A stretch of DNA of 64,000 nucleotides from Vitrella brassicaformis CCMP3155 (taxonomy: Eukaryota > Protista > Chromerida). This document shows, piece by piece, positions 7,763 to 56,690 of the stretch (positions within the stretch are counted from its first letter, which is position 1; every line of letters begins with the position of its first letter). The position numbers and the translations under genes are program-made. The notes beneath the pieces are model-generated. The model was not told where the DNA came from, did no database searches, and saw only the letters and a list, made by a program, of their open reading frames with translations. The stretch covers positions 4,661 through 68,660 of the forward strand of contig CDMY01000479.1 of assembly GCA_001179505.1 (NCBI GenBank), written 5' to 3'.

Positions 7763-10450
7763 ATGGATGAAGCTCCAGCGCTGTCCACTGCTGATCTGGA
7801 AGCCCTTTGGAGCCACTATGACAAAGACGGTGAGACGGAAGCATTGAATTTGAATGAACATCTATTGTTCGTTCTGATTTGCTGCTCGTTCTCGTGTGTG
7901 GCAGGCTCCGGCGCGCTGGTTGGAGGACGCACGCATTGTCAAGTGGGGTGCAATGCATTGTGTCTTCTCCTTGTGCTTGACTGTCATTTAGAGTCCAGCA
8001 GAGGTGCGAGAGCTCATTGTCAAGATACAGCAGAAGGAGGGCCTGTCGGGCACACTCAACGACCACTACTTCGCCAAGGTCTTCAAGCTCTTGGATCCCG
8101 ACGGCAACAACTCAGTCGACAAAAGCGAGTTTTTTGGTCAGTTCAACAAGTTCTGGAAGCACAGAAGGAGGTACCTCACGGTGAGTAAGGGGAGAGACGG
8201 CACCGCTGCGTGTTCTGGAATGATCTGATGGCGATGGTCTTCATGTCAGGGCGAGGAGGGAGGCACGATGAATCCTGCACCTGCGGCTGGTCCGGCAGAG
8301 ACTGATGCGCTGACCGAGAGCGATCTGAAGGCGCTTTGGAATGCGTATTCGGGCGGCGATGAGAAGATGGTAACACACTGACGCGCCAACCTCCACACGA
8401 TTGGATATCGATTCCCCTCCTCCACTTCTGTCTGTTGTATAGGACCACGGAGAGGTGCGCAAGCTGGTGGATCGCATCAGGGTACATACAAGCTGTTTAA
8501 GGCGATGTGCTCCATAGACTCACTTTGTCGAAAAACCGTGTTCTTGCAGGAGAAGGAGGGCATCCCCGGCACTCTGCAGGATGTGTACTACAAGAAGATA
8601 TTCAAGATGCTCGACCCCGACAACAGCGGCTTTGTCGACTGGAGCGAGTTCAAAGCCAACTTCAATCGGTTCTGGAGACACAAGAAGAGATACCTCTCGG
8701 TGGGCGGGCGGTGGGTGCAGCACAGCAGGAAGGACAAGGGACAAGGGACAAGCAGGCCTGCAATGTGCATTCAGGAGGGCGGTGAGATGGGTGAGCTCCA
8801 TCTACGTATGGGGGCGGCGCTGCTGTTGACGAGCCGGAATTGCGACAGCCAGAGCTGCGGGCGTTGTGGGACCACTACGACAAGGATAAGTCTGGCGCAC
8901 TGGTGAGCTGGGGCCGGCACCAACCCTTTCAATGGGCCTGTCCTTCATGTTTTCCGGCGTCCTGCCTTCAGAGCCGCACAGAGCTTCGTGTGCTGTTGGA
9001 AAAGATCCGTGTGAGTGATTTCTGTTGTCTCTGTGTGAGGGTGTCGATGGAATATTCTGCCCTGCCCATCCATTTCTGCAGTATCGCGACGGCGAGCGAG
9101 AGGCCTTGTCGGACAGCTTTCTCAATGAGGTGTTCCGCATGCTTGATCCGGACAACTCGGGCGAGATCACCTGGGAGGAATTCAGCACACGATTCAACGA
9201 CTTCTGGACGAGACGAAAAAGACGGGTAGAGCGAAGAAGCGCACAGATCGATCCACGCGTATTTTGCCACTTCTGTCAGTCGGGTGCTGATGGTGTGAGC
9301 GCCGCCACGTCTGCGCCGAAGCTGACGGATGAGGAGCTGCGTACACTGTGGGACCACTATGATACGGATGGTTCCGGCTACCTGGTGAGACAACAAGGCA
9401 TGGGATCAATGGGGGATCATCCATGAATGTCAGCCCCTTCTTGTGGTCAGGATCGTAACGAGATTCGTGTGTTGCTGGAGAAAATACGGGTACAGACATG
9501 TCGGTGTCTCGCATTCTTCTGCCTGTCTTTCCTTCTTTCTTTCTGACAGATCCGTGACGGCGTACCCGACCCATTGCCAGAGCCCTTCGTCCAGATGGTA
9601 TTTCAGGAGCTCGATCCTGACGGCTCCAATCGCATCGACTTCGACGAATTTCGAGCCAAGTTCAATGACTTCTGGGTGAGTACAGATACATACATACAAG
9701 ACGATCCGTCTCTTCTCCCCATACATACTGGACCGATCTTTTCTTGCTGTAGGTGCGTCGGTCTGGACGATTCATGGCCGCGACTCGTCCGTCGGCGACA
9801 GAGCTGAGGGTGAGGCAGGCCCGCATCATGATTGGGGTGCCGCTCTCGCTTGAGGCTCTGCGGCTCGATGAGAGGGCCGCTGGAGTGCGGCAGAGCCTCG
9901 AGAGCTGCCCTGGGCTCTTCTGGGGGCCAAATGCGCCACCCTGGAAGGGCCCACTGCCGTGGTGATGGCATGGATAGCTGCTGTGTCTGTCGTGTGGTGT
10001 GGTGTGGTGTGTGCAGATGATGGGGACGCCTCTCGGCAGGTGAGCGTCGCCCGCAGGCTGATTGATTTGTGGATGATAGATATGCACTTATGGACGATTC
10101 TGCGATTCCACAGAGTGGGCCACCTGAGCGACCCTTTTCGGTGCCCGCACTGTCAGCTGCCGATCAATGACGACAGACTAGCGGAGTATGTCAGGAGGAA
10201 AGAAGGTCAGCGAGCAATGTCTGTGTCTCACCGTAGTAGCTACGGAGAGATCTTAGTTATTCGCGTGTTTCTTCCAGGATTTCTCCACCGGACGGAGGAG
10301 GAGACGACTCTGCGACCCACCGCTCTGCCGCTGTACAGCCCGACGTTCTACCAAGGAATGTTCAAGACGGGTCGCACTTACGGCCCCGTGCCGCCATCCT
10401 TCTTCCGCTCGCCATACGACACGCACACGTGGGCGGTGCCCAAGACATAG
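7763..10450 (+). CDS. Multi-EF-hand Ca2+-binding protein: four tandem EF-hand pairs plus a unique C-terminal region
   Basis: Four repeats of L-x-x-L-W-x-x-Y-D-x-D-x-S-G-x-L...E-x-R-x-L...F-x-x-L-D-P-D-x-(S/N)-x-x-(V/I)-x-x-x-E-F...F-N-x-F-W, for example LDPDGNNSVDKSEF, LDPDNSGFVDWSEF, LDPDNSGEITWEEF, LDPDGSNRIDFDEF. Last exon ends ...WAVPKT* at 10450. Confidence 0.8.
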
Positions 10451-11007: not shown

Positions 11008-12125
11008 TCAGAACCCAGGTCCAGCCAGCCATCTTACAGCCCCGCAGCTGACGAAGTCCTCCGAAAACGCGCTGGCCCTCCGTGGCCCTCTGGCGGCCGC
11101 CGCGCGCTGCGCACGACTCGCCACTTGAAACGCGTTGTGCTTCATCAACTCGACGGACAGGAGCTGGCTCCAGCGGTTGACGATGCTCTCTCGGAAAGCT
11201 GTGTCCTCCTCCATGGGAATGGATGTGGGGCGAGGCTTTCGTTTGGCGAGCATCTTGAGAAAATCCATGGTCTTGTCTCCCCATCTGCCGAATGTCTCCG
11301 CAGCGAGGGGCACGAAGCGGAAGCCGGCCGCTTGGGTGATTGGTCCATACTTGTCGATCTTGTCTTTCTCNNNNNNNNNNNNNNNNNNNNNNNNNNNNNN
11401 NNNNNNNNNNNNNNNNNNNNNNNNNNNNNNNNNNNNNNNNNNNNNNNNNNNNNNNNNNNNNNNNNNNNNNNNNNNNNNNNNNNNNNNNNNNNNNNNNNNN
11501 NNNNNNNNNNNNNNNNNNNNNNNNNNNNNNNNNNNNNNNNNNNNNNNNNNNNNNNNNNNNNNNNNNNNNNNNNNNNNNNNNNNNNNNNNNNNNNNNNNNN
11601 NNNNNNNNNNNNNNNNNNNNNNNNNNNNNNNNNNNNNNNNNNNNNNNNNNNNNNNNNNNNNNNNNNNNNNAGCCGCCTTGCCACCTGGGAGCTGTGCACC
11701 ACGCCGGTTGACTGTTCGGTGGAAGGGGATGGGGGAGTTGTCAGGGCGGCAGGGGTGGGCGACGGTGACGTCGAGCAGGTAATCACTGCCGTCGATCACA
11801 CAATAGATGTCCATGCGCTGGTTGTTGGGGTTGTCGGCAGGCGGGGTGATGCCGAGGCTGTGCAGAGACACCTCCACATTAGAGGGAACATCTGCTTCAG
11901 CCAGGATGCGAACAAACAAGTTGCGCATGTTGTTGTGTCTCGTGACTCGCTCACGGCCCGTGTGACAGACGTAGAAGTGATCGCCAAACTTGTCCACCTC
12001 CCCGCCGCAGATGCATCGCTGCGAGACGGTTGCGTGCGGGAGGGCAATGCCGAGACACCCGGCTTTGTCTGTTTGTTCTGTTCTGGCCGCATGAGCTATC
12101 GAATCGAGCGCCAGTGAGAAACGAG
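11008..12125 (-). mobile_element. 5'-truncated non-LTR retrotransposon, 3' part with Zn-knuckle and restriction-like endonuclease (RLE; CRE/SLACS-like type)
   Basis: CICG-x6-H-x3-C knuckle, RHN, E, RMDI, LLDVTVAHP, EKDKIDKY and FVPLAAETFGRWG are the canonical motif order of RLE-clade C-termini. No RT domain is present in the window. The ORF is interrupted only by an N gap. Confidence 0.85.
11371..11670. other. Assembly gap (300 N) inside the retrotransposon ORF
   Basis: Run of N seen directly in the sequence. Confidence 0.99.
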
Positions 12126-12611
12126 CTGCATCACACACAAGCACACAAATCTACCACAAAACACGATGAATGGCGCCTTTGTGAGCCGCACTGACCCTGC
12201 TGCTTGTCGACGGATATGCATCGGTGGCAATGAAGGAACCCGCACCTGCAGCCACGGACGAATGAGTGGATGGATATGAGCCACGTCGATCTTCCTTCTT
12301 CTGTGCCTTCCGCCATGCGTCAACGCACGCCCTCACCATATTTGTCCTCATTCTGGTTGCTGGAGGCCAGCCCGAGGCTGGCGGCGGATCCGAAGCCGCC
12401 GTCGACGCTGGGTCAGTGCAGCGAGTCGAGATGGCGAGCGGCACAAAGGCGCAGCGTGCGCCTCTGGCCCCAAATCTGCGAGCCTTAGCCCCAAATTCAG
12501 TCCTCCCTTCTTCCCCCTCCGTTCTTCCCCCCGATGACGACAGCGCACGGGAACACCGACAAGGCGGGACCATTCTCCCACCTGTTCAAGCGCCGTTACT
12601 CATGTCCGAAC

Positions 12612-14268
12612 ATGCTCAATTCACTACCGATGACCAGGTTCAAGGACCTCGTCGACCAGGCCAAGCCACTTCTATGCGACCCCGATGCCCTCACCTTGGC
12701 GCAACTCGGCTCCCTCCTGCCGCTGGATTTGTGGCAACGCGTCGATATCAGCGACACCAAGGTGGTGCCCACGAGATGCATGTGACGAAGTAACAACACG
12801 TCGCATTGCTGCGCTTTGTGCATCCAACGCCAGGTGGGTTTCAAGAGGCCCGGCATCCACATCGTAACCCCATGGACAGAGACACGAGAAGGCAGGACCC
12901 GTTCTGTCTGTTGTGCTGCATTTCTTGGGTCTTTTTCAGTTGTACCGGTCAGATTGGCACCCCCCAATATGCCACTTCAACCACGGCACGGGTGAGTGGA
13001 CGGACGAAGAGTGCATCCGCTTTAATCAAGATCTGTGGTATGTGCACATCCTGCACCCGGTAAGCAAGGGCGAGGCGGGGCGGGGGATTTCCCAGGGCTA
13101 TATGTCGGTGTGTGGATGTGTCATTCAGACCGTTGAGTTCCTCATGTGTAATAAAAGCCACAGCGAATGGGACAATGCGACCTCGCCGCCTCCTTTGCGA
13201 CACAGTCAGCATCTGGGCAATGGGGACAGCGTCTAATGGAAAGAACCCACCCGACTTGCGGCTCTTCTGTCTGTCTGTCTGTCTGTCTGTCTGTGTCTTC
13301 TCGAATCAGAGTTCAGCTATCACGTCGAGAGAGGGGGGGTCTATTTGTTGCAAGGAGGAGAGCTGTATGGTCTGAGGTCTGGTGTGGATTATGTCGGTAA
13401 GAAGCTGATGAGAGACACACGGTTTTTCATCGAGAATCCAGCTGTTTGTTCGTCAGACTTGCTGTGTATCCTCGACAGAATGGCGCGGGCCTCAGCAGAG
13501 GCCCACGTTCTGTACTTCACCCACTGGACGTCTCCTCATATCCACTTCCGAAAGCCCAACAGCCGCTGGACAGAGCCTGCGGGCATCGTGTGCAATGCGT
13601 TCTCCGGCCGCGTGTGGCATGCGGCCATGCCATTCTATCACGTGAGCTGCACACCTCACAGAGACACCTGCACTCGCCTTTTGGGGGGTCGACGTGGTCT
13701 CATCCTGCTCTCACACAGGGGGTCAGCTTCCTCCTGCACGACGGCGACGGCTCTTTCTGGGACCGCGCTCCTGGAAGTAAATGGAGAATGATAAACACAC
13801 ACCACAACGCGCAGTGGATATTTTATGGTTGATGGTGGTTTTTGGTTCCTGTAGATGGCAACTACGTTCTCCGAGACGCCGGCCTGTATCTGCTGGTCGA
13901 GGGGCGCATTCTTCGCCCCGAGTGCCTTCGTAGGCGGCAGAACCTTCTCCGCTTTGTCGTTCCTGGCTTGAAACTCGCACTAGCAGACGCCTCAGGTGCG
14001 ACACACACGCGACCAATCTTGATCATCTGTGTGTCTCTTTCTATACGGTCTTTACAGCGGGACCGTTCGCCAAGCCGAGCATGGCGGCTTCTCCGGGCAG
14101 CAGCCCCACGTAACCAAACACCGCTGCTGCACATGTGGGGGGATCGCTTGCCTCATCTGTCTGTCGTTGTGTCTCAGCACCAGGACGACCCAGCCACCCA
14201 GCCTCCCGACCAGCTCCCCACCCGGCTCGCCTTCGTACTCACCCAGCAGCAGGCCAGCAGAGAGCTGA
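12612..14268 (+). CDS. Non-catalytic protein with two tandem CBM25-like (starch-binding) domains, paralog 1
   Basis: Spliced domain 1: HWHPPICHFNHGTGEWT...LWYVHI...VEFLMCNKSHSEWDN...YHVERGGVYLL. Domain 2: VLYFTHWTSPHIHFRKPNSRWTEPAG...VSFLLHDGDGSFWDRAPGNGNYVLRDAGLYLL. Both resemble the CBM25 pattern P-x-I-H-Y...W-T...F-N-D-G...W-D...N-Y. Start at 12612 or 12630; the 3' end is uncertain. Confidence 0.6.
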
Positions 14269-14639: not shown

Positions 14640-17600
14640 GCAGCCCACAGCCAAACTGTCGGCAGAGAGACACCATCCATGCATCCCTTCATCCATGCAC
14701 ACAGATAGACTCTACAAGAGCAACACGTGCGGCCACCCGCCCCGCCCCCCGCCCACTGACTCATTTGGCGGCTAGTTGCATGTTGAGACGGTACCCTCCC
14801 CAATCAGCTTGCTCACATGACCCGCCCGTCATCGTGTAGAGCGCTTTGCTACGATCGTAGCACTCCCAAGCAAACGAACGGGCGGCCTGGACCCTCGACC
14901 CGCCATCCTCCTCATCCAACTCAGCATAAAATGAAGTCCACACTCGCTGCGCGAAGTGTCGACACCAACTGCAGGAATGACTGCACACCCTCCTTGCTAT
15001 GCCACTGATTTATGTCGAGGGCATCGAGAGGGGGAGAAACCAGGCGCTCTACACGGGGTGAGCGAAAGCTCCACTCCGCTGGCACGCTGGCTGGCCACTC
15101 ATAGGACATAGGCTCGGCTATATCGACCTCACTAAGGCGTGGCACAGAGAGGTATGATAGCAGCTCACAGCCCACAGAGGCGCTAAACAATTCGCGGAAA
15201 AAGACTCTCTCGAGCCCCGCCAGCCCCCCGAAAAGACGGCTGAGCTTAGAAGGTGCAGAGGGCAGGTCAGAGAGGGAGAGAGTGCGAAAACTCACATCTA
15301 TATGACGGACAGCTGGGAAGGATCGGCTCGCGGCGATGTGGCCCGCTCCATCCCTCTCAACCAGCCATGTGGGGATGCTCTCCACCACACCTGAGGCACT
15401 CGCTTTGATACGGAGCCAGAGGGATGTCGCGTTGCTGAAGACGAGCTTGTCACGCCATGATGGGTGGATTGGTGTGCCACCGAGCAGCAGCCAGACCTGA
15501 CACATACAGCAGACATACGTAGGGAGCCTTGTCTTGTTGAGATGCTCGACCTTTGCCCTTTTCTTCTACCCTTTTCTCTTACCTCCCCCGCCTCGGCCGC
15601 CAGCTGTTTCACTTTCTCTCCGTAGGGACCGTCAGGCGCAGGATGGGCGGGCCCAGCATCGCTGCTGCAGTCCACCATGAAGCGCGTACGTGTCCCGCCG
15701 CTCGAGAGCAGCCACCTCCGTGGCCGCCACTCCAGCTCACAGCTCACCTCCGCCGCCCACTTGCCGACGACCTGCAAGTCGGCCGCGCGCTGCGTGCAAT
15801 CCGCACCGATGTTCGGCTCAGACACAAACTCCAACCTCTTGGGCACATCTGCACCACACGAGAACGACGAAGACAGTCAGTCATTTGGTCACAAGTGCCC
15901 AACCAGCCTGTGTCAAGTCACCTTTCCTCTCTGGTTTGGCCCAGTGTTGGTCGAGGGCCTGCTTGAGCTGGTTGAGACGGCTGAACTGATTCATCTCGAT
16001 CTCCAGTCCGGTGATGGTCTTGATATCAGGGCAGCGGCCGAGGGCAGCGGTGAAGTCGGCCCACTGGGGGTCGTCGAAACGCATCATCTCGGCCTCGAGC
16101 CGCTCGACATTGGGCGATTCCTTAATGAGGCGCGTGAGGCACCCTGAGGACGTATCATACTGGGAAAGACGGCCGACTTGAAGACTCCTGAGCTGCGGGA
16201 GGGCCCAGCGACGAATGCTGCAGATAACCACAGCAACACGACGATGTGACAGTTGGGTGCAGAAACCCATCTCCTTCTCCCCTGTTTGCAGACCTGCTGA
16301 TGTGGCCAAGCCACTTTTCGGGCTGAATGTTCAGTCTTTCTAGGCTGGGAAATGCGGTGGGATCCCCTGAGGGTCGCGGCTGCGGTGGCTGGTGCGCACC
16401 CCATGTGTCGTCGTTGTCTTCATAGGGCTCGTGGCTATCCGGATACTTGTCCTCTGCAACATGCAGCTCCTTGAGCGTCTCTGCAGACCTCTCCAGCAGC
16501 TCGACCACACATTGCACCACACCGGACGCCTCCACATAGGCCGCCCGGATCTTGCCCTGCACACACACACACACACACCAAGCCAACAAATGTCACGTGC
16601 CACAGCTTTGCCAATGACACCACACTCCCATCTCACCAGGTGCTTCACTTCTCTCAGCTTGCGAATGGCCTGGTATTTGGCCTCCTCATCCTTCGTCATA
16701 CTGAAGTGCCGAAACACACCAAAGGTCTCGTCGGTGGCCTTCTGGTGGGTCTCCTTGTTGACGCGCGTCAGGCGAGTTGCCATCATAGTCGTCAGAAACG
16801 AGCCCATGTGGCCCATGACGCCCTCGGGCAGTCCAGGCAGACACGGCCGGCCGTAATTCTGACACACAGACACAACAGAGAGAGAGGGCATGCATGCGCT
16901 GGAGATGGCCTTATCTGTTTGTGTTTCACCTTTGTATTTGCTCCCCGCTGCTGTGTCGCTGCTGGTGCACCAGATACGCCAATCAAACAACCTGAAGGCG
17001 CGATGATAACGATGTTTGCTGCCTTCGGTGGGCCGGTGCTCATGCGTACCTCCATCACTACTGGCAGCAGCAGCAGCGGCAGCGGCAGGCGAGCTGGTCC
17101 CGACTCGTGAGCGCTTCCCATCACCAACAGACACCTGAACAAGTGAGTGAGATGTTTCACTTGCGCATGAATGAAATGTATCTTTGTGTGTGCGCTTTGG
17201 TGTACCGCTTTGCTCTGGTGTGCTGCCCTGTCGGTCTCGCCCGAACTCTCAGACACGCTAGAGCCAACGTCGTTGACATTGTACAGCCACCGAAACGTCT
17301 TGCGGTCACCATCCTTGCGCTGACATCCACACAGGGACAGACACAAGGGAGCGATTGGTTTGTATGCCTCTCCCTCCCTTCTCACTTCTATCGTTCGCTT
17401 CATCCTTACCTTTGTGCTGTGGCGGGCAGTGGGAATCTGTGCCAGCTCGTCGCTGAGCATCGAGTCGACGTCTGTGAGAGTCTTCAGGACACCCGACAAG
17501 CGGCCAGCCAACGATACACAGGCCTTCAGAGTACACAGGACTGAGTGTGGGCACATGGATGGCTGCGTGCATGTGTGTGTGTGTGTTTGTGGTGACCTGT

Positions 17601-18790
17601 GTATTGGAGTCTGCATTTGCTATCTTCACCTTCGCCACCTCAGTGCTCGCGGCTATGTTAGAGGCAACCTGCACACAGCAGGGCCAGCAACCGCTGCGGC
17701 ATGCAAAGGGACTCGCTATCCCTCCCCTCTCGTCTTTCTCTCACCGAGTGTATCTTATCTATAATATTCCGCAAGCTGCCGTTGCCATCCGATCCGTCGC
17801 CTTCCTCCCCTGAATGCAGCACACCATCACCACACGTACAAGGCATGACACTATTGGCGGCTGACGGCCATCAGTCGACGTGTGGTTGCATGTGTGAGTG
17901 TGTCATCACCTCGTGAGGGCGCCGGGCCGCCATCGCTACTGACGTCCACCGTCGGCACAGATCAACCACCTGCACCAACGGAGAGAGGGCGAGGGAGATG
18001 AGATCCATCCATTTATCCATCCATCCATCCATCCATCCTTGTGTGTCTGGGTCACTCCTCAGGTGGTAGCCGGCAGCCTCCACACAGCTGCAAATGACAT
18101 ATCGTCAAGAGAAGAGGCCCGATGTCAGCGCTGCCGTCAGCCGCCTGTACAGCCTCAGCCTCTCATCAAATCTGACAAGAGTATGACACGCATCCATCCA
18201 GGGGGGTGAGCCATCTTCTGTGTGTTTGTCTCTGCTGTATTGCCTTCTGGCTGCCTGCCTGTGTGATCTCTGGCTGCCTCGGCGATGCATATGCCACTCA
18301 GGTGCTCATGCATTCTTCATTGGGATATCTATCGTGTGGCCTTACCGATGAGAATGGGATGAAGGCCGGAGGCATCTTCAGCTCACGGCAGCGCCAAATT
18401 ACAAGCCATTCGTTCTTTTGTCGATGGCTCGAAGTGTCGAGAATTGGGGACAAACCCCGCTCCAAACCCTACGAGACGCCATTTTTTGAATTTTCTGCAT
18501 TTGCCCGCTGCTTCCTGTCACCGCTTCCCTTCCCCTGATGCCGCGTACTGCAGCCGCAGCCCGAGGCCTTCTCTCTGTGTCTGAGAGGGAATGAGGACAA
18601 TCGTGACAGCAACGGACAACACATTCAGCGGTACGGCAACTGCGGGCCCCGGGCTTTCGGCCGCTGCTGGCCATTCATGAAGCCACTTGTTTTTTGAGGG
18701 CAGCGGAAGCCGGCCATGATTACTGCAGCCGGCACAGAAGACAGGCACAAACGCTACGCTCTGGCTGACAATGATAATGAGAATCCGAAA
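14640..18790. repeat. Left arm of a ~4.1-kb inverted segmental duplication (partner 56730-60850)
   Basis: Reverse-complement matches in coding and non-coding sequence. Example: gctggccattcatgaagccacttgttttttgagggcagcgga near 18665 matches tccgctgccctcaaaaaacaagtggcttcatgaatggccagc near 56825. 14720-14770 matches 60700-60750. Confidence 0.9.
14761..17121 (-). CDS. F-box-like / LRR-like lineage-expanded protein, copy 1; 11-nt deletion frameshifts the last ~50 codons (possible pseudogene)
   Basis: LPGLPEGVMGHMGSFLTTMMATRLTRVNKETH is F-box-like, followed by LRR-like segments (LKELHV, FPSLERLNI, LPQLRSLQV). Colinear with copy 2 at 58344-60704. The frame stops at 14921 (VDFILC*) while the homologous C-terminus continues in another frame to 14761. 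Confidence 0.7.
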
Positions 18791-19664
18791 GATCCGACGT
18801 GTCGTATGCGTTGTCTGTGCGTTTCTCTGACGTCAGCTGGTAAAAACCCGTCGGAATGCGAGTATGTTGACGTCCACGACCTGTTCGACATGATAAACCT
18901 CCTCACAATCTCATCCCGCCACCCCTCCCCTATCTCCCCCCGATGCGGCCGAGATTCGGAAAGATGTCATCATCGGGATTCGCGGCCTCTACTACTATGC
19001 CCTCGCCTATCTTTCGCCGCCACGTCAATGAAGCGCCTAGGCATCGACAATCTGAATAACGACGTGCTCGTGCGGTGGACTGAGTTGCGGCAGGGCCTTG
19101 AAGAGGCGAGCACAACAACGAATGCCACATCATCGCTGCAGCCCCGTTACCCATCCCGACGCCTCTGCCGCCCATCCTACACTATAAGGGGGCAACTTTT
19201 ATCGATTGCGGGACCATGCTGCAGGGAGATGCCGAGAGAGGAGAACAGTTGTGCGGCTGTCACACGACCCCATCGAGCAGATCAGAAGTGGCAAGCTCAG
19301 CTGCTTGCGGCCTATGCCTGGGGATGCATCGTCCCTGAAGTGGCGCTGGTTTCCATTGACGGCCGCATGAGCGACGACTCGGGAGAGACGTTAGAAGAGG
19401 ATCTTAGTCTGAGCCCCGCCACAACCCCGACAAAGATATAGGAGATCAAGGAGATATGTGGCCGGCAGGTGGAGAGATTCGCCGAAAGGGGGGTGATAGG
19501 AATGGAGGGACCAACGGTTAGGGCGGTGCGACTAGACGAGGAGCGCAAAGACGTGGGCCATCGAGTCTACACAAATGTGCACACGCACATTCCTGTCTTG
19601 CCTCGCAGGATATTATCTCGCTGGCGAGAAGCACGACGGCATTTTGTGTCAGTGGCTTGACAGT

Positions 19665-47864: not shown

Positions 47865-49476
47865 TCAGTTGCCCCTATGGTGTCTCCTCTCCGGCCGCTC
47901 TGAAGGACGACAGTGACTCAGCCACGAACGGATCCAAGCATCCCGCTCCCGCTTGCTCTCATAATGCTCATCGGCAGCTGACACACAGCACAACACACAG
48001 ATGGGTAAACAAATCCATCTCACTTCTCCAGGCTGCTCGTTGCTTACCGGCCATGTCAGCCGTCTTTGCCTCCAGCAGCTGGTATATGTGGCAAAGGAGA
48101 GCATCGTCAGCCGCGTGGACGGTGGAGGCCGAGTACATGCAGCTCTACGATATGATGTAAAGGCCCAGCGAGGGGATCACATAGGCATCCCTGCCATCTG
48201 GAGAGGGAGACACGGAGCCAGCAGGTATCAGCAGTTGCGGCTGTCTTACCCTGCGGGCAATCCCAAGCGGCTCTCGCTCCATTACCATCATTGAACTTCA
48301 GGCGCAGGTTCTGACAACACACGACACGATGAGCGACACAAAGATAGCAGAGTGTGTCCGGCGTCTTCTCACCTCATGCCAGGCCATCGAGACGTGAAAG
48401 AGGTCTCCCCCGCCCTCTGGCACCCCCTCACACCTGACACCGGGCGAAAGGGTCCACTTCTCCTCCCTCACTCCGCTGCCTGAAATCTCGTCTGCTCGTC
48501 GATAGTGGCAGCAGGGGTGTATCCACCCCGTCGTGTACAGGACGTTTGCCCTGTTTGCTGTTATGGCTTCCTTATCGAGGAGCGACAGAATGTCTGAACG
48601 AACAAAACAGGGAAGCCGAATGTATGGTTTTAGGTCGACTCTCACCGAGACAGGCCGCACGAGCGATGATATCCTCGCACCAGAGTGTGTGTGGACAACG
48701 CCTTCATGCAGCAAATAGACCCCCTCTTGCTTGATGAAATAGTAAGGCCCTAATGCACCAGTTAACCGAGACTGTTCTCTTCTTTGCTTGATAGCTGTAT
48801 GAGTGGCGCTGGCCTTACGTTTTCCGTCTGTGTCGACGGGCGCATCCCACTCTTTCTCCCTGCCGCCCTCGGTGATCCCCATCACGAAGCACATTGACTG
48901 AAAGAGAAGGTAGGCAGCCCGACAACAATTCGTGCCCGGCTGTCGGCCTTGATGTGTCTCGCCTCACCTTCCGCTCAACATGAACATACCACAGCTCATT
49001 CGTTAGCTGGAGGCACTCCTTGCTGTTCACACGATACTCCGACGGATCCTCTGCAAGGCCGACGAAATACTCACACTTCAGTTGTATCTGCTCGCTGCTG
49101 CTGCTGCTGCTGTTGCTGCTGTTGCTTGACTTGAGTGTGTAGTAGAGGTGCAGCCCCGGTCGCTGGAGGTCTCTTGTATCGTCAGCCTGCAACATCAGAA
49201 GGCGTACGACAACTGACACAGCGTGTTTTCCTTCGTATTTTCAACCTGATGCCATCGGGCGGCCGAGTCGAACGTCGCTTGCTGTGCTTCGGCAGTTCTC
49301 GCTGCGGTGGGCTGGCCGGGTGAGTTGACCGGCTGGAGGCGGAATCCGATGAGCTGATGGGGCTTGACCAGGGAACGAATGTGAGCCCATATCTCCTCGC
49401 GAGAGATATCGGAAAGCCCCCTTACACCCTTCCGCCGCTCTCTAATGCGCGCGAGAAGTTCTCCTATCTTCGTCAT
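47865..49476 (-). pseudogene. Tandem CBM25-like domain protein, paralog 2, with one in-frame TAG at 48147-48145
   Basis: Colinear with 12612-14268: QRPGLHLY / LWYVHV / EKEWDAP / YFIKQEGVYLL / SDILSLLDK...VLYTTGWIHPCCHYR...KWTLSPGVRC / LKFNDGNGARAAWDCPQDG...GLYII. The splice phases checked in the 3' exons keep one frame, which continues past the TAG to a stop at 47865. Confidence 0.65.
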
Positions 49477-49513: not shown

Positions 49514-49813
49514 NNNNNNNNNNNNNNNNNNNNNNNNNNNNNNNNNNNNNNNNNNNNNNNNNNNNNNNNNNNNNNNNNNNNNNNNNNNNNNNNNNNNNNN
49601 NNNNNNNNNNNNNNNNNNNNNNNNNNNNNNNNNNNNNNNNNNNNNNNNNNNNNNNNNNNNNNNNNNNNNNNNNNNNNNNNNNNNNNNNNNNNNNNNNNNN
49701 NNNNNNNNNNNNNNNNNNNNNNNNNNNNNNNNNNNNNNNNNNNNNNNNNNNNNNNNNNNNNNNNNNNNNNNNNNNNNNNNNNNNNNNNNNNNNNNNNNNN
49801 NNNNNNNNNNNNN
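49514..49813. other. Assembly gap (300 N) flanked on both sides by G runs, in a divergent promoter region
   Basis: gagggggg|N300|ggggggggg lies between ATG 49476 (-) and ATG 49877 (+). Confidence 0.99.
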
Positions 49814-55970: not shown

Positions 55971-56339
55971 TGTGTGTGCACGTGGGCCGCGACTGCCAAT
56001 CGGACATCACCTATTGCAAGACACAACAAAGGTCCATTCAGCAAGAAACACCCTCTCACCTTCTCTGTCGCACGTTCAGCTACATGTAAGTACCTTACTT
56101 GTCGTCGCCCTTGCTGACCGCGGCCTTGGGGTGGCTGCTCAGCAGCTCCTTGATGTGGAACAGGAGCTTGATGACCTTCTTCGCGGCCTCAACGCCCTCC
56201 TCCCACGTCATGTGTGCCGCGTGTAGAGCCCACAGCAGCCGCAACACCCACAGCAGCAGCAGCAGCAGCACGGTCAGCAGCGCCACCACGACGATGGCAC
56301 CATGCCCGCTCCTCAATGCAGTCCCCGAACAAACGCACG

Positions 56340-56690
56340 GAATAGTAGCTTTCCATACTACACAGGCGTGCGAAGGGATGGCGGTCTCGACTGTCTGTGT
56401 CGGTCACGGTGTGGAAGGGCGGCGCGTCCCACTCTTTCTCCCTGCCGTCCCAACATCCGTTCCCTCCCCATCTTCTCTCACCTTCCGGTCGATGTGGATG
56501 TACCACAGCTCATTGGTGAGCTGCCCGCACATCTTGCTGTCCAGACGATGGTACAGCGGCTCCCCTGACTCACTTTCCACGCAGCCCACAACGTACTCGC
56601 ACTTCGGCATCCTTAGGCTCCGGTTGGCTGCCGCTGCTGCCGCCGTGGAAGTCGGTGAGCCGCCGCCGTTGCCGAGCAGAGGAACACCGA
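56340..56690 (-). pseudogene. Remnant of a third CBM25-like paralog (first domain only)
   Basis: KCEYVVGCVESESGEPLYHRLDSKMCGQLTNELWYIHIDRK and GREKEWDAP closely match paralog 2 (KCEYFVG...CLQLTNELWYVHVERK, GREKEWDAP). Downstream sequence diverges and the upstream frame is closed by a stop. Confidence 0.7.

What the first reader, a model, noticed from the sequence alone, without database searches (positions are those of the whole stretch)
12612..14268. Unrecognised family of non-catalytic tandem CBM25-like starch-binding proteins (4 copies or remnants in 64 kb)
Seen: after manual splicing, this gene and 47865-49476 share a two-repeat architecture, W-x-x-P-x-x-H-(F/Y)...W-T...W-D...Y-x(4-5)-G-(V/L)-Y-x-(L/I). 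Remnants sit at 56340-56690 and ~18855. No hydrolase, synthase, kinase or phosphatase domain is attached. Known: CBM25 is mainly a bacterial amylase starch-binding module; chromerids and coccidians store amylopectin-type glucan; plants use catalytically inert CBM48 proteins (PTST) to target enzymes to starch. Inference: this could be an undescribed, expanding set of glucan-granule scaffold or targeting proteins in a chromerid. The ORF track fragments these genes, so automated annotation would probably call them hypothetical.
Basis: partly seen in the sequence, partly recalled or inferred. Interest (0 to 1): 0.75.

Follow-up and report, generated by a model that had tools for sequence, protein, structure and literature searches.

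The report
Enzyme-free tandem CBM25 starch-binding gene
The alga Vitrella brassicaformis has an intact gene for a protein made of two starch-binding (CBM25) modules and no enzyme, one member of a family so far seen only in Vitrella that may tether other proteins to its cytosolic starch, though binding is untested.

Summary
The core reading holds. The gene at 12534-14268 (+) is the annotated Vitrella brassicaformis protein P0002 (355 aa, "uncharacterized"), with ten GT-AG exons.

**Identity.** It encodes a helical N-terminal region, two CBM25 beta-sandwiches, a helix and a Ser/Pro tail.
- Sequence: phmmer against Bacillus halodurans CBM25 gives E 2.5e-4 over the full domain.
- Predicted structure: Z 12.1 for module 1 and Z 9.9 for module 2, rmsd 2.3 Å.
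- Relatives: 47 of 51 non-Vitrella relatives carry Pfam CBM_25.
- The His/Trp/Trp sugar-binding triad is kept in both modules.
- It has no catalytic domain, signal peptide or membrane segment.

- "Unrecognised" is overstated: UniProt already labels one paralog as CBM25.
- The copy at 49476-47865 (-) is a different half-type (B). Its first module is degenerate, and it carries a +2 frameshift and a premature TAG.
- 56673-56333 (-) is a fragment of the B first module only.
- ~18855 is a 5-residue trace, not a CBM.
- On contig C406, types A and B are spliced into single four-module genes.
- One paralog is fused to a USP deubiquitinase.

Starch binding and the scaffold role are inferred, not shown. 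This scan already noted the family on other Vitrella contigs.

The parts
12534..14268 (+). Type-A gene (protein P0002, 355 aa). Ten exons: 12534-12761, 12834-12863, 12940-13059, 13129-13204, 13310-13396, 13457-13641, 13719-13776, 13855-13995, 14058-14109, 14178-14268 (the last includes the TGA stop).
   Evidence: The database protein maps exactly onto the window with GT-AG introns. The protein was found.
12534..12761 (+). Exon 1: a disordered N-terminus (residues 1-25) and a small helical region (helices 26-67). It has no signal peptide. Paralogs start at the Met encoded at 12630.
   Evidence: AF2 secondary structure; hydropathy; paralog N-termini.
12834..13396 (+). Exons 2-5 encoding CBM25 module 1 (residues about 80-174). 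The His/Trp/Trp triad is kept; the residue equivalent to BhCBM25 Asp81 is Ser.
   Evidence: Family HMM E 8.3e-16. VIA-align gives Z 12.1, rmsd 2.3 Å, 85 residues aligned to 2c3x_B. Residue table.
13457..13995 (+). Exons 6-8 encoding linker helix 179-192, CBM25 module 2 (residues 192-285; H210, W218, W256, N264) and helix 283-308.
   Evidence: phmmer to 2c3v_A, E 2.5e-4, domain positions 10-98. Z 9.9, rmsd 2.3 Å, 91 residues aligned. HMM E 9.8e-22.
14058..14268 (+). Exons 9-10: a disordered Ser/Pro-rich tail and the stop codon. The 3' flank stays homologous to the intron that joins type A to type B in the C406 genes, but the donor site is lost here.
   Evidence: pLDDT below 50; composition; DNA alignment A5 read.
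47865..49476 (-). Type-B gene. The annotated model is P0028 (287 aa, exons 49476-49246, 49186-48968, 48897-48819, 48593-48373, 48310-48250, 48197-48145). Homology to the paralogs continues to about 47865. It has a degenerate first module and a CBM25 second module.
   Evidence: Pfam CBM_25 E 8e-4, below threshold. HMM E 1.5e-17 for residues 188-287.
48686..48695 (-). A +2 nt (CA) insertion in a CA run, inside the exon that encodes the last strands of the first type-B module. It shifts the frame relative to three paralogs, and the annotated model skips this exon.
   Evidence: DNA alignment A4; frames.
48145..48147 (-). In-frame TAG where paralogs P0003 and P0005 have Gln. It removes the last beta-strand of the second type-B module and the C-terminal helix.
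56333..56673 (-). Fragment of a type-B first module only (two exon pieces, 56670-56482 and 56446-56333). No second module or N-terminal part lies nearby.
   Evidence: tblastn with P0005: 78% and 89% identity, E 2e-46.
18854..18868 (+). It has no significant similarity to any CBM and sits at the end of a duplicated segment.
14673..18802 (+). One arm of an inverted segmental duplication: 14673-16500 and 18015-18802 match 60807-58976 and 57475-56720 on the minus strand at 67-85% identity. The other arm ends at the type-B fragment.
   Evidence: blastn. The genome holds only three copies of the 0.8-kb piece.
49514..49813 (.). Run of 300 N lying 38 nt upstream of the type-B start codon. It hides whatever precedes the type-B gene.

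Best explanation
The gene at 12534-14268 is an intact, spliced nuclear gene of Vitrella brassicaformis. It encodes a soluble protein with no enzyme domain, most likely cytosolic.

The protein has a short helical N-terminal region, two genuine CBM25 beta-sandwich modules joined by a helix, a further helix, and a disordered Ser/Pro tail. Each module keeps the single alpha-glucan site of CBM25: the two stacking tryptophans and the histidine.

The most likely mechanism is bivalent, avidity-enhanced binding to the surface of the alga's cytosolic starch (amylopectin) granules. The helices and tail would then be free to recruit or position other proteins, making this an adaptor or scaffold rather than an enzyme.

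It is the 'A' half-type of a family seen so far only in Vitrella. Elsewhere (contig C406) the full form is a four-module gene with type A spliced to type B. In this window the A half stands alone with its own stop codon. The B half, 35 kb away on the other strand, is damaged.

Shown: gene structure, CBM25 homology, the predicted fold, conserved binding residues, absence of catalytic or targeting signals, and family organisation. Inferred: glucan binding, location on starch, and the adaptor role.
For: **Gene model.** The database protein maps exactly onto ten GT-AG exons. Intron positions within the CBM25 module are the same in all Vitrella copies.

**CBM25 identity.**
- phmmer of P0002 against PDB sequences gives BhCBM25 (2c3v_A) as the only significant hit: E 2.5e-4, domain positions 10-98 of 102.
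- The AF2 model has pLDDT above 90 in both modules.
- The top Foldseek hit is 2c3w_D: TM 0.79, rmsd 2.3 Å.
- VIA-align gives Z 12.1 for module 1 and Z 9.9 for module 2.
- An exhaustive phmmer search of 1.84 billion proteins gave 59 hits. Of the 51 non-Vitrella hits, 47 carry Pfam CBM_25.
- Paralogs P0003 and P0004 pass Pfam's threshold.

**Binding site.** The BhCBM25 ligand residues are W34, W74, H26, D81 and N76 (PMC4625611). They correspond to W218, W256, H210, N264 and R258 in module 2. The H/W/W triad is present in every Vitrella A-module 1, A-module 2 and B-module 2, and in more than 90% of 154 outside domains.

**Avidity.** Tandem CBM25/26 binds granular starch about 50 times more tightly than either module alone (PMC3398936; PMC4625611).

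**No enzyme or targeting signal.** Pfam finds nothing else in P0002. There is no hydrophobic N-terminus or membrane segment. No GH13 exon lies on any CBM25 contig.

**Compartment.** Chromerid starch is cytosolic (bioRxiv 10.64898/2026.09.25.754361).

**Constraint.** dN/dS between paralogous exons is 0.15-0.68.

**Family organisation.**
Against: - No binding, localisation or expression data exist. I found no transcript evidence; P0002's 90% cluster has a single member.
- P0002 itself scores far below Pfam's CBM_25 threshold (11.5 bits against 27.3).
- Two secondary ligand positions differ from BhCBM25: N76 is Arg in module 2, and D81 is Ser in module 1.
- dN/dS reaches 0.5-0.7 for module 1, which indicates relaxed constraint.
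- The gene looks like a truncated derivative of a four-module gene.
- Neighbouring family members in this window are decayed, so this copy could also be on its way out.
- The structure is a prediction built from a shallow alignment of 26 sequences.
Confidence: 0.62

Rival explanations
1. By-product of segmental duplication. The window copies are broken pieces of the four-module A-B gene that are decaying, and the intact-looking A copy has no function of its own.
For: - The type-B copy has a frameshift and a nonsense codon.
- The element at 56.5 kb is a bare fragment.
- The 3' flank of type A keeps homology to the A-B intron with the donor site lost.
- The window holds a large inverted segmental duplication.
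- An earlier scan note calls the repeated gene pairs on another Vitrella contig segmental duplicates.
Against: - Type A keeps an open frame across ten exons with canonical splice sites.
- Both modules fold with pLDDT above 90 and keep the binding triad.
- dN/dS against paralogs is below 1 for every exon tested.
Confidence: 0.17
2. The modules have the CBM25 fold but serve a purpose other than storage starch. They might recognise another glycan or a glycosylated or ubiquitin-pathway partner, as the USP fusion in a paralog hints.
For: - Paralog P0004 joins the same two modules to a USP deubiquitinase through a 60-nt intron.
- Other Vitrella genes carry single CBM25 modules grafted onto unrelated sequence, for example P0006 and the earlier scan notes.
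- Secondary ligand residues differ from BhCBM25.
Against: - The stacking Trp pair and the His that define alpha-glucan recognition in CBM25 are invariant across all the good Vitrella modules.
- All close structural matches are alpha-glucan binders: CBM25, 26, 41, 20 and 48.
- A USP fusion fits equally well with targeting a deubiquitinase to starch.
Confidence: 0.14
3. A secreted or phagosomal accessory for digesting external starch, like the CBM-only proteins of bacterial amylosomes.
For: - The nearest outside relatives are modules of secreted bacterial amylases and alpha-glucosidases.
- The R. bromii proteins Sas6 and Sas20 appear among the structural matches.
Against: - No paralog has a signal peptide or hydrophobic N-terminus.
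- There is no dockerin or anchor.
- Vitrella is a phototroph with cytosolic starch.
Confidence: 0.04

Closest known systems
CBM25 of Bacillus halodurans alpha-amylase G-6 (BhCBM25; PDB 2C3V, 2C3W, 2C3X)
   Same: Same domain family. The sequence match spans the whole domain (E 2.5e-4). The predicted fold matches (Z 12.1 and 9.9, rmsd 2.3 Å). The H26/W34/W74 ligand triad is conserved.
   Different: BhCBM25 is one module of a secreted bacterial GH13 enzyme. Here two modules stand in a eukaryotic, intron-rich, signal-less protein with no enzyme domain. Identity is about 25%. The N76 and D81 equivalents differ in part.
Vitrella four-module A-B genes on contig C406 (public models P0001, P0003, P0005)
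   Same: Direct paralogs: 50-75% identity, the same exon structure, and the same N-terminal helices, modules and Ser/Pro linker.
   Different: In those genes the A tail is spliced by a canonical 59-nt intron into a type-B half, giving four modules. In this window type A ends in its own stop codon and type B is unlinked and damaged.
Chromera velia Cvel_4418 (P0047) and similar CBM25-FN3-GH13 alpha-amylases (P0007, P0012)
   Same: The closest non-Vitrella eukaryotic CBM25 found, and the nearest outside neighbour of module 1 in the domain tree.
   Different: Those proteins carry a GH13 catalytic domain and FN3 domains. Only the CBM is shared. E is just 2e-4.
Plant PTST proteins (CBM48 plus coiled coil), by function only
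   Same: Non-catalytic proteins that combine a glucan-binding module with helical segments for binding partners. This is the proposed way of working. The comparison rests on general knowledge and was not tested here.
   Different: A different CBM family (48, not 25), located in the plastid, with one module. No homology outside the generic beta-sandwich; the AMPK-beta/CBM48 folds score only Z about 6.
Ruminococcus bromii Sas6 and Sas20, and human STBD1 (CBM-only glucan binders)
   Same: Enzyme-free proteins whose job is to bind starch or glycogen. Their CBM26 or CBM20 domains appear among the structural matches (Z 9.3 and 7.1).
   Different: Sas proteins are extracellular amylosome parts with dockerins. 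STBD1 is membrane-anchored with a single CBM20. Neither is in the CBM25 family.

Membership tests
CBM25 (CAZy family 25; Pfam PF03423) | Sequence similarity to family members at the family's own threshold | tested here: inconclusive
   P0002 scores only 11.5 bits against the 27.3-bit Pfam cut-off, and the exon pieces give no hit. Against that, phmmer to BhCBM25 gives E 2.5e-4 over the full domain. Paralogs P0003 and P0004 pass the cut-off at 33.6 and 35.9 bits. Of 51 outside relatives found with P0002, 47 are Pfam CBM_25. Membership is therefore met by transitive and pairwise evidence, not by the curated threshold.
CBM25 (CAZy family 25; Pfam PF03423) | Beta-sandwich fold of about 95 residues that superposes on solved CBM25 structures | tested here: met
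   The AF2 model has pLDDT above 90 in both modules. BhCBM25 is the top match for each module: Z 12.1 (85 residues, 2.3 Å) and Z 9.9 (91 residues, 2.3 Å). Foldseek gives TM 0.79. This is a predicted structure, not a solved one.
CBM25 (CAZy family 25; Pfam PF03423) | Single alpha-glucan site formed by two Trp and a His (BhCBM25 W34, W74, H26), with polar helpers N76 and D81 | tested here: met
   H210, W218 and W256 in module 2, and their equivalents in module 1, are conserved. D81 corresponds to N264, and Asn is the family norm at that position (142 of 154 domains). N76 is Arg in module 2. D81 is Ser in module 1. I could not inspect the geometry in the model coordinates.
CBM25 (CAZy family 25; Pfam PF03423) | Demonstrated binding to starch or malto-oligosaccharides | not testable with these tools
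   This needs recombinant protein and binding assays.
Non-catalytic starch-granule adaptor (PTST-like way of working) | No catalytic domain in the complete gene | tested here: met
   Pfam finds only CBM_25. The model shows only helices, two sandwiches and a disordered tail. The stop codon is in place. There is no USP or GH13 similarity downstream in the window. No RNA-seq was available to exclude unannotated exons.
Non-catalytic starch-granule adaptor (PTST-like way of working) | Same compartment as starch, and a surface for binding a partner | tested here: inconclusive
   There is no signal or transit-type N-terminus, and chromerid starch is cytosolic. Helices 26-67, 179-192 and 283-308 are predicted. 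No partner is known.

The most novel reading that the evidence does not exclude
Vitrella has built, from the CBM25 of an ancestral alpha-amylase, its own class of cytosolic starch-granule adaptors with two or four modules. These would play the part that CBM48 PTST proteins play in plants. One member delivers a USP deubiquitinase to the granule, which would tie ubiquitin signalling to storage-glucan turnover in a relative of apicomplexan parasites.
Probability: 0.3. Interest if true: 0.7.

Novelty: new variant of a known kind. Interest (0 to 1): 0.45.

Why it matters
CBM25 is known almost only as an appendage of secreted bacterial starch-degrading enzymes. Here it appears as the sole functional content of an intracellular eukaryotic protein, in a family that has multiplied in one chromerid alga.

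If these proteins sit on starch granules, they would be the first candidate non-enzymatic granule proteins in the lineage that leads to apicomplexan parasites. They are absent from the most recent pathway survey of that lineage that I could read. The idea is directly testable with recombinant protein and with the transfection tools now reported for the related alga Chromera (PMC12407925; title and abstract only).

For annotation, the practical lesson is that intron-split CBM25 modules fall below Pfam's threshold. As a result, most family members are labelled uncharacterized, and several public gene models are cut or merged wrongly.

Tried and rejected
- **Pfam on single exon-bearing ORFs.** No hits at E up to 10. 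The fragments are too short, so this says nothing against CBM25.
- **PF03423 and PF16760 on the whole genome.** No hit in this window. All eight weak CBM_25 hits fall on places that the window's own exon also hits, which gave the first transitive link.
- **The look-up of encoding contigs for P0002.** Not on record, so I obtained no neighbourhood gene calls.
- **The ~18855 'remnant'.** Rejected as a CBM.
- **First module of type B as a CBM25.** Only half-supported: hhalign probability 58% for the C-terminal half, and generic sandwich matches at Z about 7. I call it a degenerate CBM-like module, not a CBM25.
- **A GH13 amylase next to any Vitrella CBM25 locus.** None found.
- **A single inversion separating types A and B in this window.** The orientations and the retained intron homology allow it. 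The right-hand junction lies in the N run, and flank searches found no supporting homology, so I leave it as a possibility.
- **The ORF beside the other N run (11008-12144, minus strand).** No Pfam hit.
- **Joined spliced model.** I did not build or search one of my own. Exon pieces were searched by reference, and the full-length work used the public proteins P0002, P0028 and their paralogs returned by the tools.

Full report
**Source and gene model**

The window is contig C479:4661-68660 of a 72.7-Mb, 1064-contig assembly. The proteins it encodes are deposited as Vitrella brassicaformis CCMP3155. Nothing in it looked human.

The public protein P0002 (355 aa, "unnamed protein product / Uncharacterized protein") maps without a mismatch onto ten exons between 12534 and 14268 on the plus strand. 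Every intron is GT-AG.

Exon-bearing ORFs were searched by reference. Full-length analyses used the database proteins that the tools returned.

**Is it CBM25?**

Pfam alone would say no. The exon pieces give nothing, and P0002 scores 11.5 bits against a cut-off of 27.3. Five independent lines say yes.

1. phmmer of P0002 against all PDB sequences returns one significant hit, the CBM25 of Bacillus halodurans amylase (2c3v_A). E is 2.5e-4, aligned over positions 10-98 of 102.
2. An exhaustive phmmer search of 1.84 billion representatives finds 59 proteins. Of the 51 outside Vitrella, 47 carry Pfam CBM_25, often in several copies, on GH13 amylases, GH31 glucosidases or alone.
3. Paralogs P0003 and P0004 pass Pfam's threshold. 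UniRef already names P0003 a CBM25-domain protein.
4. An AlphaFold2 model built from a 26-sequence alignment has pLDDT above 90 across two beta-sandwiches. BhCBM25 is the best structural match of each: Foldseek TM 0.79, rmsd 2.3 Å, and VIA-align Z 12.1 for residues 81-174 and Z 9.9 for 192-285.
5. The ligand residues of BhCBM25 are W34, W74, H26, D81 and N76 (PMC4625611). They align with W218, W256, H210, N264 and R258. The His/Trp/Trp triad is present in both modules of P0002 and in every good Vitrella module, as in more than 90% of 154 outside domains.

The first is not met. On the second, the platform residues are conserved in sequence, but I could not inspect the model coordinates.

**Architecture and likely mechanism**

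The model gives the following layout:
- a disordered N-terminus (residues 1-25);
- helices at 26-67;
- module 1 (about residues 80-174);
- a helix at 179-192;
- module 2 (residues 192-285);
- helices at 283-308;
- a disordered Ser/Pro tail.

Nothing else is detected by Pfam. There is no hydrophobic N-terminus or membrane segment. No GH13 exon lies on any contig that holds these modules. Chromerid starch is cytosolic (bioRxiv 10.64898/2026.09.25.754361).

CBM25 has one binding site per module. Joining two such modules raised affinity for granular starch about 50-fold in the Bacillus case (PMC3398936; PMC4625611).

The best-supported mechanism is therefore bivalent attachment to the surface of cytosolic starch, with the helices and tail available for partners. 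Binding, location and partners are all inferred.

**The family**

Genome-wide searches with P0002 and P0005 and a family HMM show two half-types.
- Type A, as in P0002, has two good modules.
- Type B has a degenerate first module and a good second one. In the first module the His and first Trp are replaced, there is a Ser/Asn-rich insert, only the C-terminal half matches the CBM25 profile, and the predicted fold is a generic sandwich at Z about 7. The second module gives Z 11.6 to BhCBM25.

Contig C406 carries three A-to-B pairs arranged head to tail. In each, the Ser/Pro exon of type A ends in a consensus GTGAGT donor, and a 59-nt intron leads into the first type-B exon.

Further relatives:
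- a truncated A copy on C406;
- a single-module chimera (P0006, C406 at about 21 kb);
- a three-module run on C386;
- P0004 on C343, where the two A modules are joined by a 60-nt intron to the Cys box of a USP deubiquitinase.

All modules share the same three-exon structure, so the expansion happened inside this intron-rich genome. Paralogous exons have dN/dS of 0.15-0.68.

In a domain tree, the A first modules form one well-supported group, and the A and B second modules form another. The tree does not exclude a single Vitrella origin. The nearest outside neighbour of module 1 is the CBM25 of Chromera velia Cvel_4418, a CBM25-FN3-GH13 amylase. The helices plus two-module architecture was found only in Vitrella. 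Chromerid and other protist genomes could not be searched directly.

**The other elements in the window**

The "second copy" is a type-B gene on the minus strand. It is annotated as P0028 at 49476-48145, with homology to paralogs continuing to about 47865. Relative to the three C406 paralogs it has two extra bases in a CA run near 48690. These shift the frame of the exon that encodes the end of its first module, and the public model skips that exon. It also has a TAG at 48147-48145 where the paralogs have Gln, which removes the last strand of the second module and the C-terminal helix. It is probably a recent pseudogene, unless both lesions are assembly errors. A 300-N run lies 38 nt upstream of its start codon.

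The element at 56673-56333 (-) is a fragment of the B first module only.

At ~18855 no search finds CBM similarity. Only "ECEYV" resembles the start of the B exon. It does sit at the end of a duplicated block. The segments 14673-16500 and 18015-18802 are repeated in inverted orientation at 60807-58976 and 57475-56720, and the second arm ends at the 56.6-kb fragment. So it is a breakpoint trace at best.

The 3' flank of the A gene remains alignable to the A-B intron of the C406 genes up to the acceptor, but the donor is lost and a TGA follows two codons later. This suggests that the solo A gene derives from a four-module ancestor.

**What is known**

No paper in the searchable library links CBM25 with Vitrella or chromerids. 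The 2026 survey of myzozoan starch metabolism mentions CBM20 and CBM48 proteins but not these. Eukaryotic CBM25 modules are reported on oomycete GH13 and GH31 enzymes (PMC4176579).

Enzyme-free glucan binders are known in other CBM families: PTST, STBD1, and Sas6 and Sas20. This is therefore a new variant of a known kind, namely a eukaryotic, intracellular, enzyme-free tandem CBM25 protein from a lineage-specific family.

This scan had already noted the same family on other Vitrella contigs. I checked the A-B splice, the USP junction and the duplications for myself.

**Verdict**

- CBM25 identity is near certain.
- The absence of a catalytic domain in this gene is likely, subject to transcript data.
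- The starch-adaptor function is plausible at about 0.6 and untested.

Noticed in passing
L015:394-2519 (G000:C343, about 69.8-71.9 kb, minus strand): Paralog P0004 joins the two type-A CBM25 modules and Ser/Pro linker, through an intron of about 60 nt, directly to the Cys box of a USP deubiquitinase domain (Pfam UCH, E 1e-43). No start codon lies in between. It may be a deubiquitinase targeted to starch.
   Followed up: partly
L026 (G000:C406:72.1-75.5 kb), L025 (10.3-7.0 kb), L029 (18.2-14.8 kb): Three head-to-tail A-to-B units are joined by a canonical 59-nt intron, giving four-module genes. The public models P0001, P0003 and P0005 cut these genes in the middle of a module or start them late.
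   Followed up: partly
window 14673-18802 (+) and 60807-56720 (-): An inverted segmental duplication of about 4 kb at 67-85% identity. The genome has only three copies of its 0.8-kb end piece; the third is on C1019.
   Followed up: partly
window 11008-12144 (-), interrupted by the N run at 11371-11670: A long ORF rich in Cys/His motifs (CICGG...GDH...CH...RHN) with no Pfam hit. It could be a mobile-element protein lying just upstream of the type-A gene.
   Followed up: partly
window 8500-9430 (+): Repeated exon-like ORFs with EF-hand-like motifs (DPDNSG...W.EF, LWDHYDKD.SG). This is probably a multi-EF-hand gene upstream of the finding.
   Followed up: no
L028:5000-7550 (G000:C386:87.0-89.5 kb, minus strand, near the contig end): A run of three more canonical CBM25 modules, 38-50% identical to the CBM25 of the Chromera Cvel_4418 amylase. 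No GH13 exon lies within the 9 kb downstream.
   Followed up: partly
P0047 (Chromera velia Cvel_4418): UniRef labels it only as a fibronectin type-III domain protein, but Pfam shows CBM25 + FN3 + the GH13 alpha-amylase catalytic domain.
   Followed up: partly
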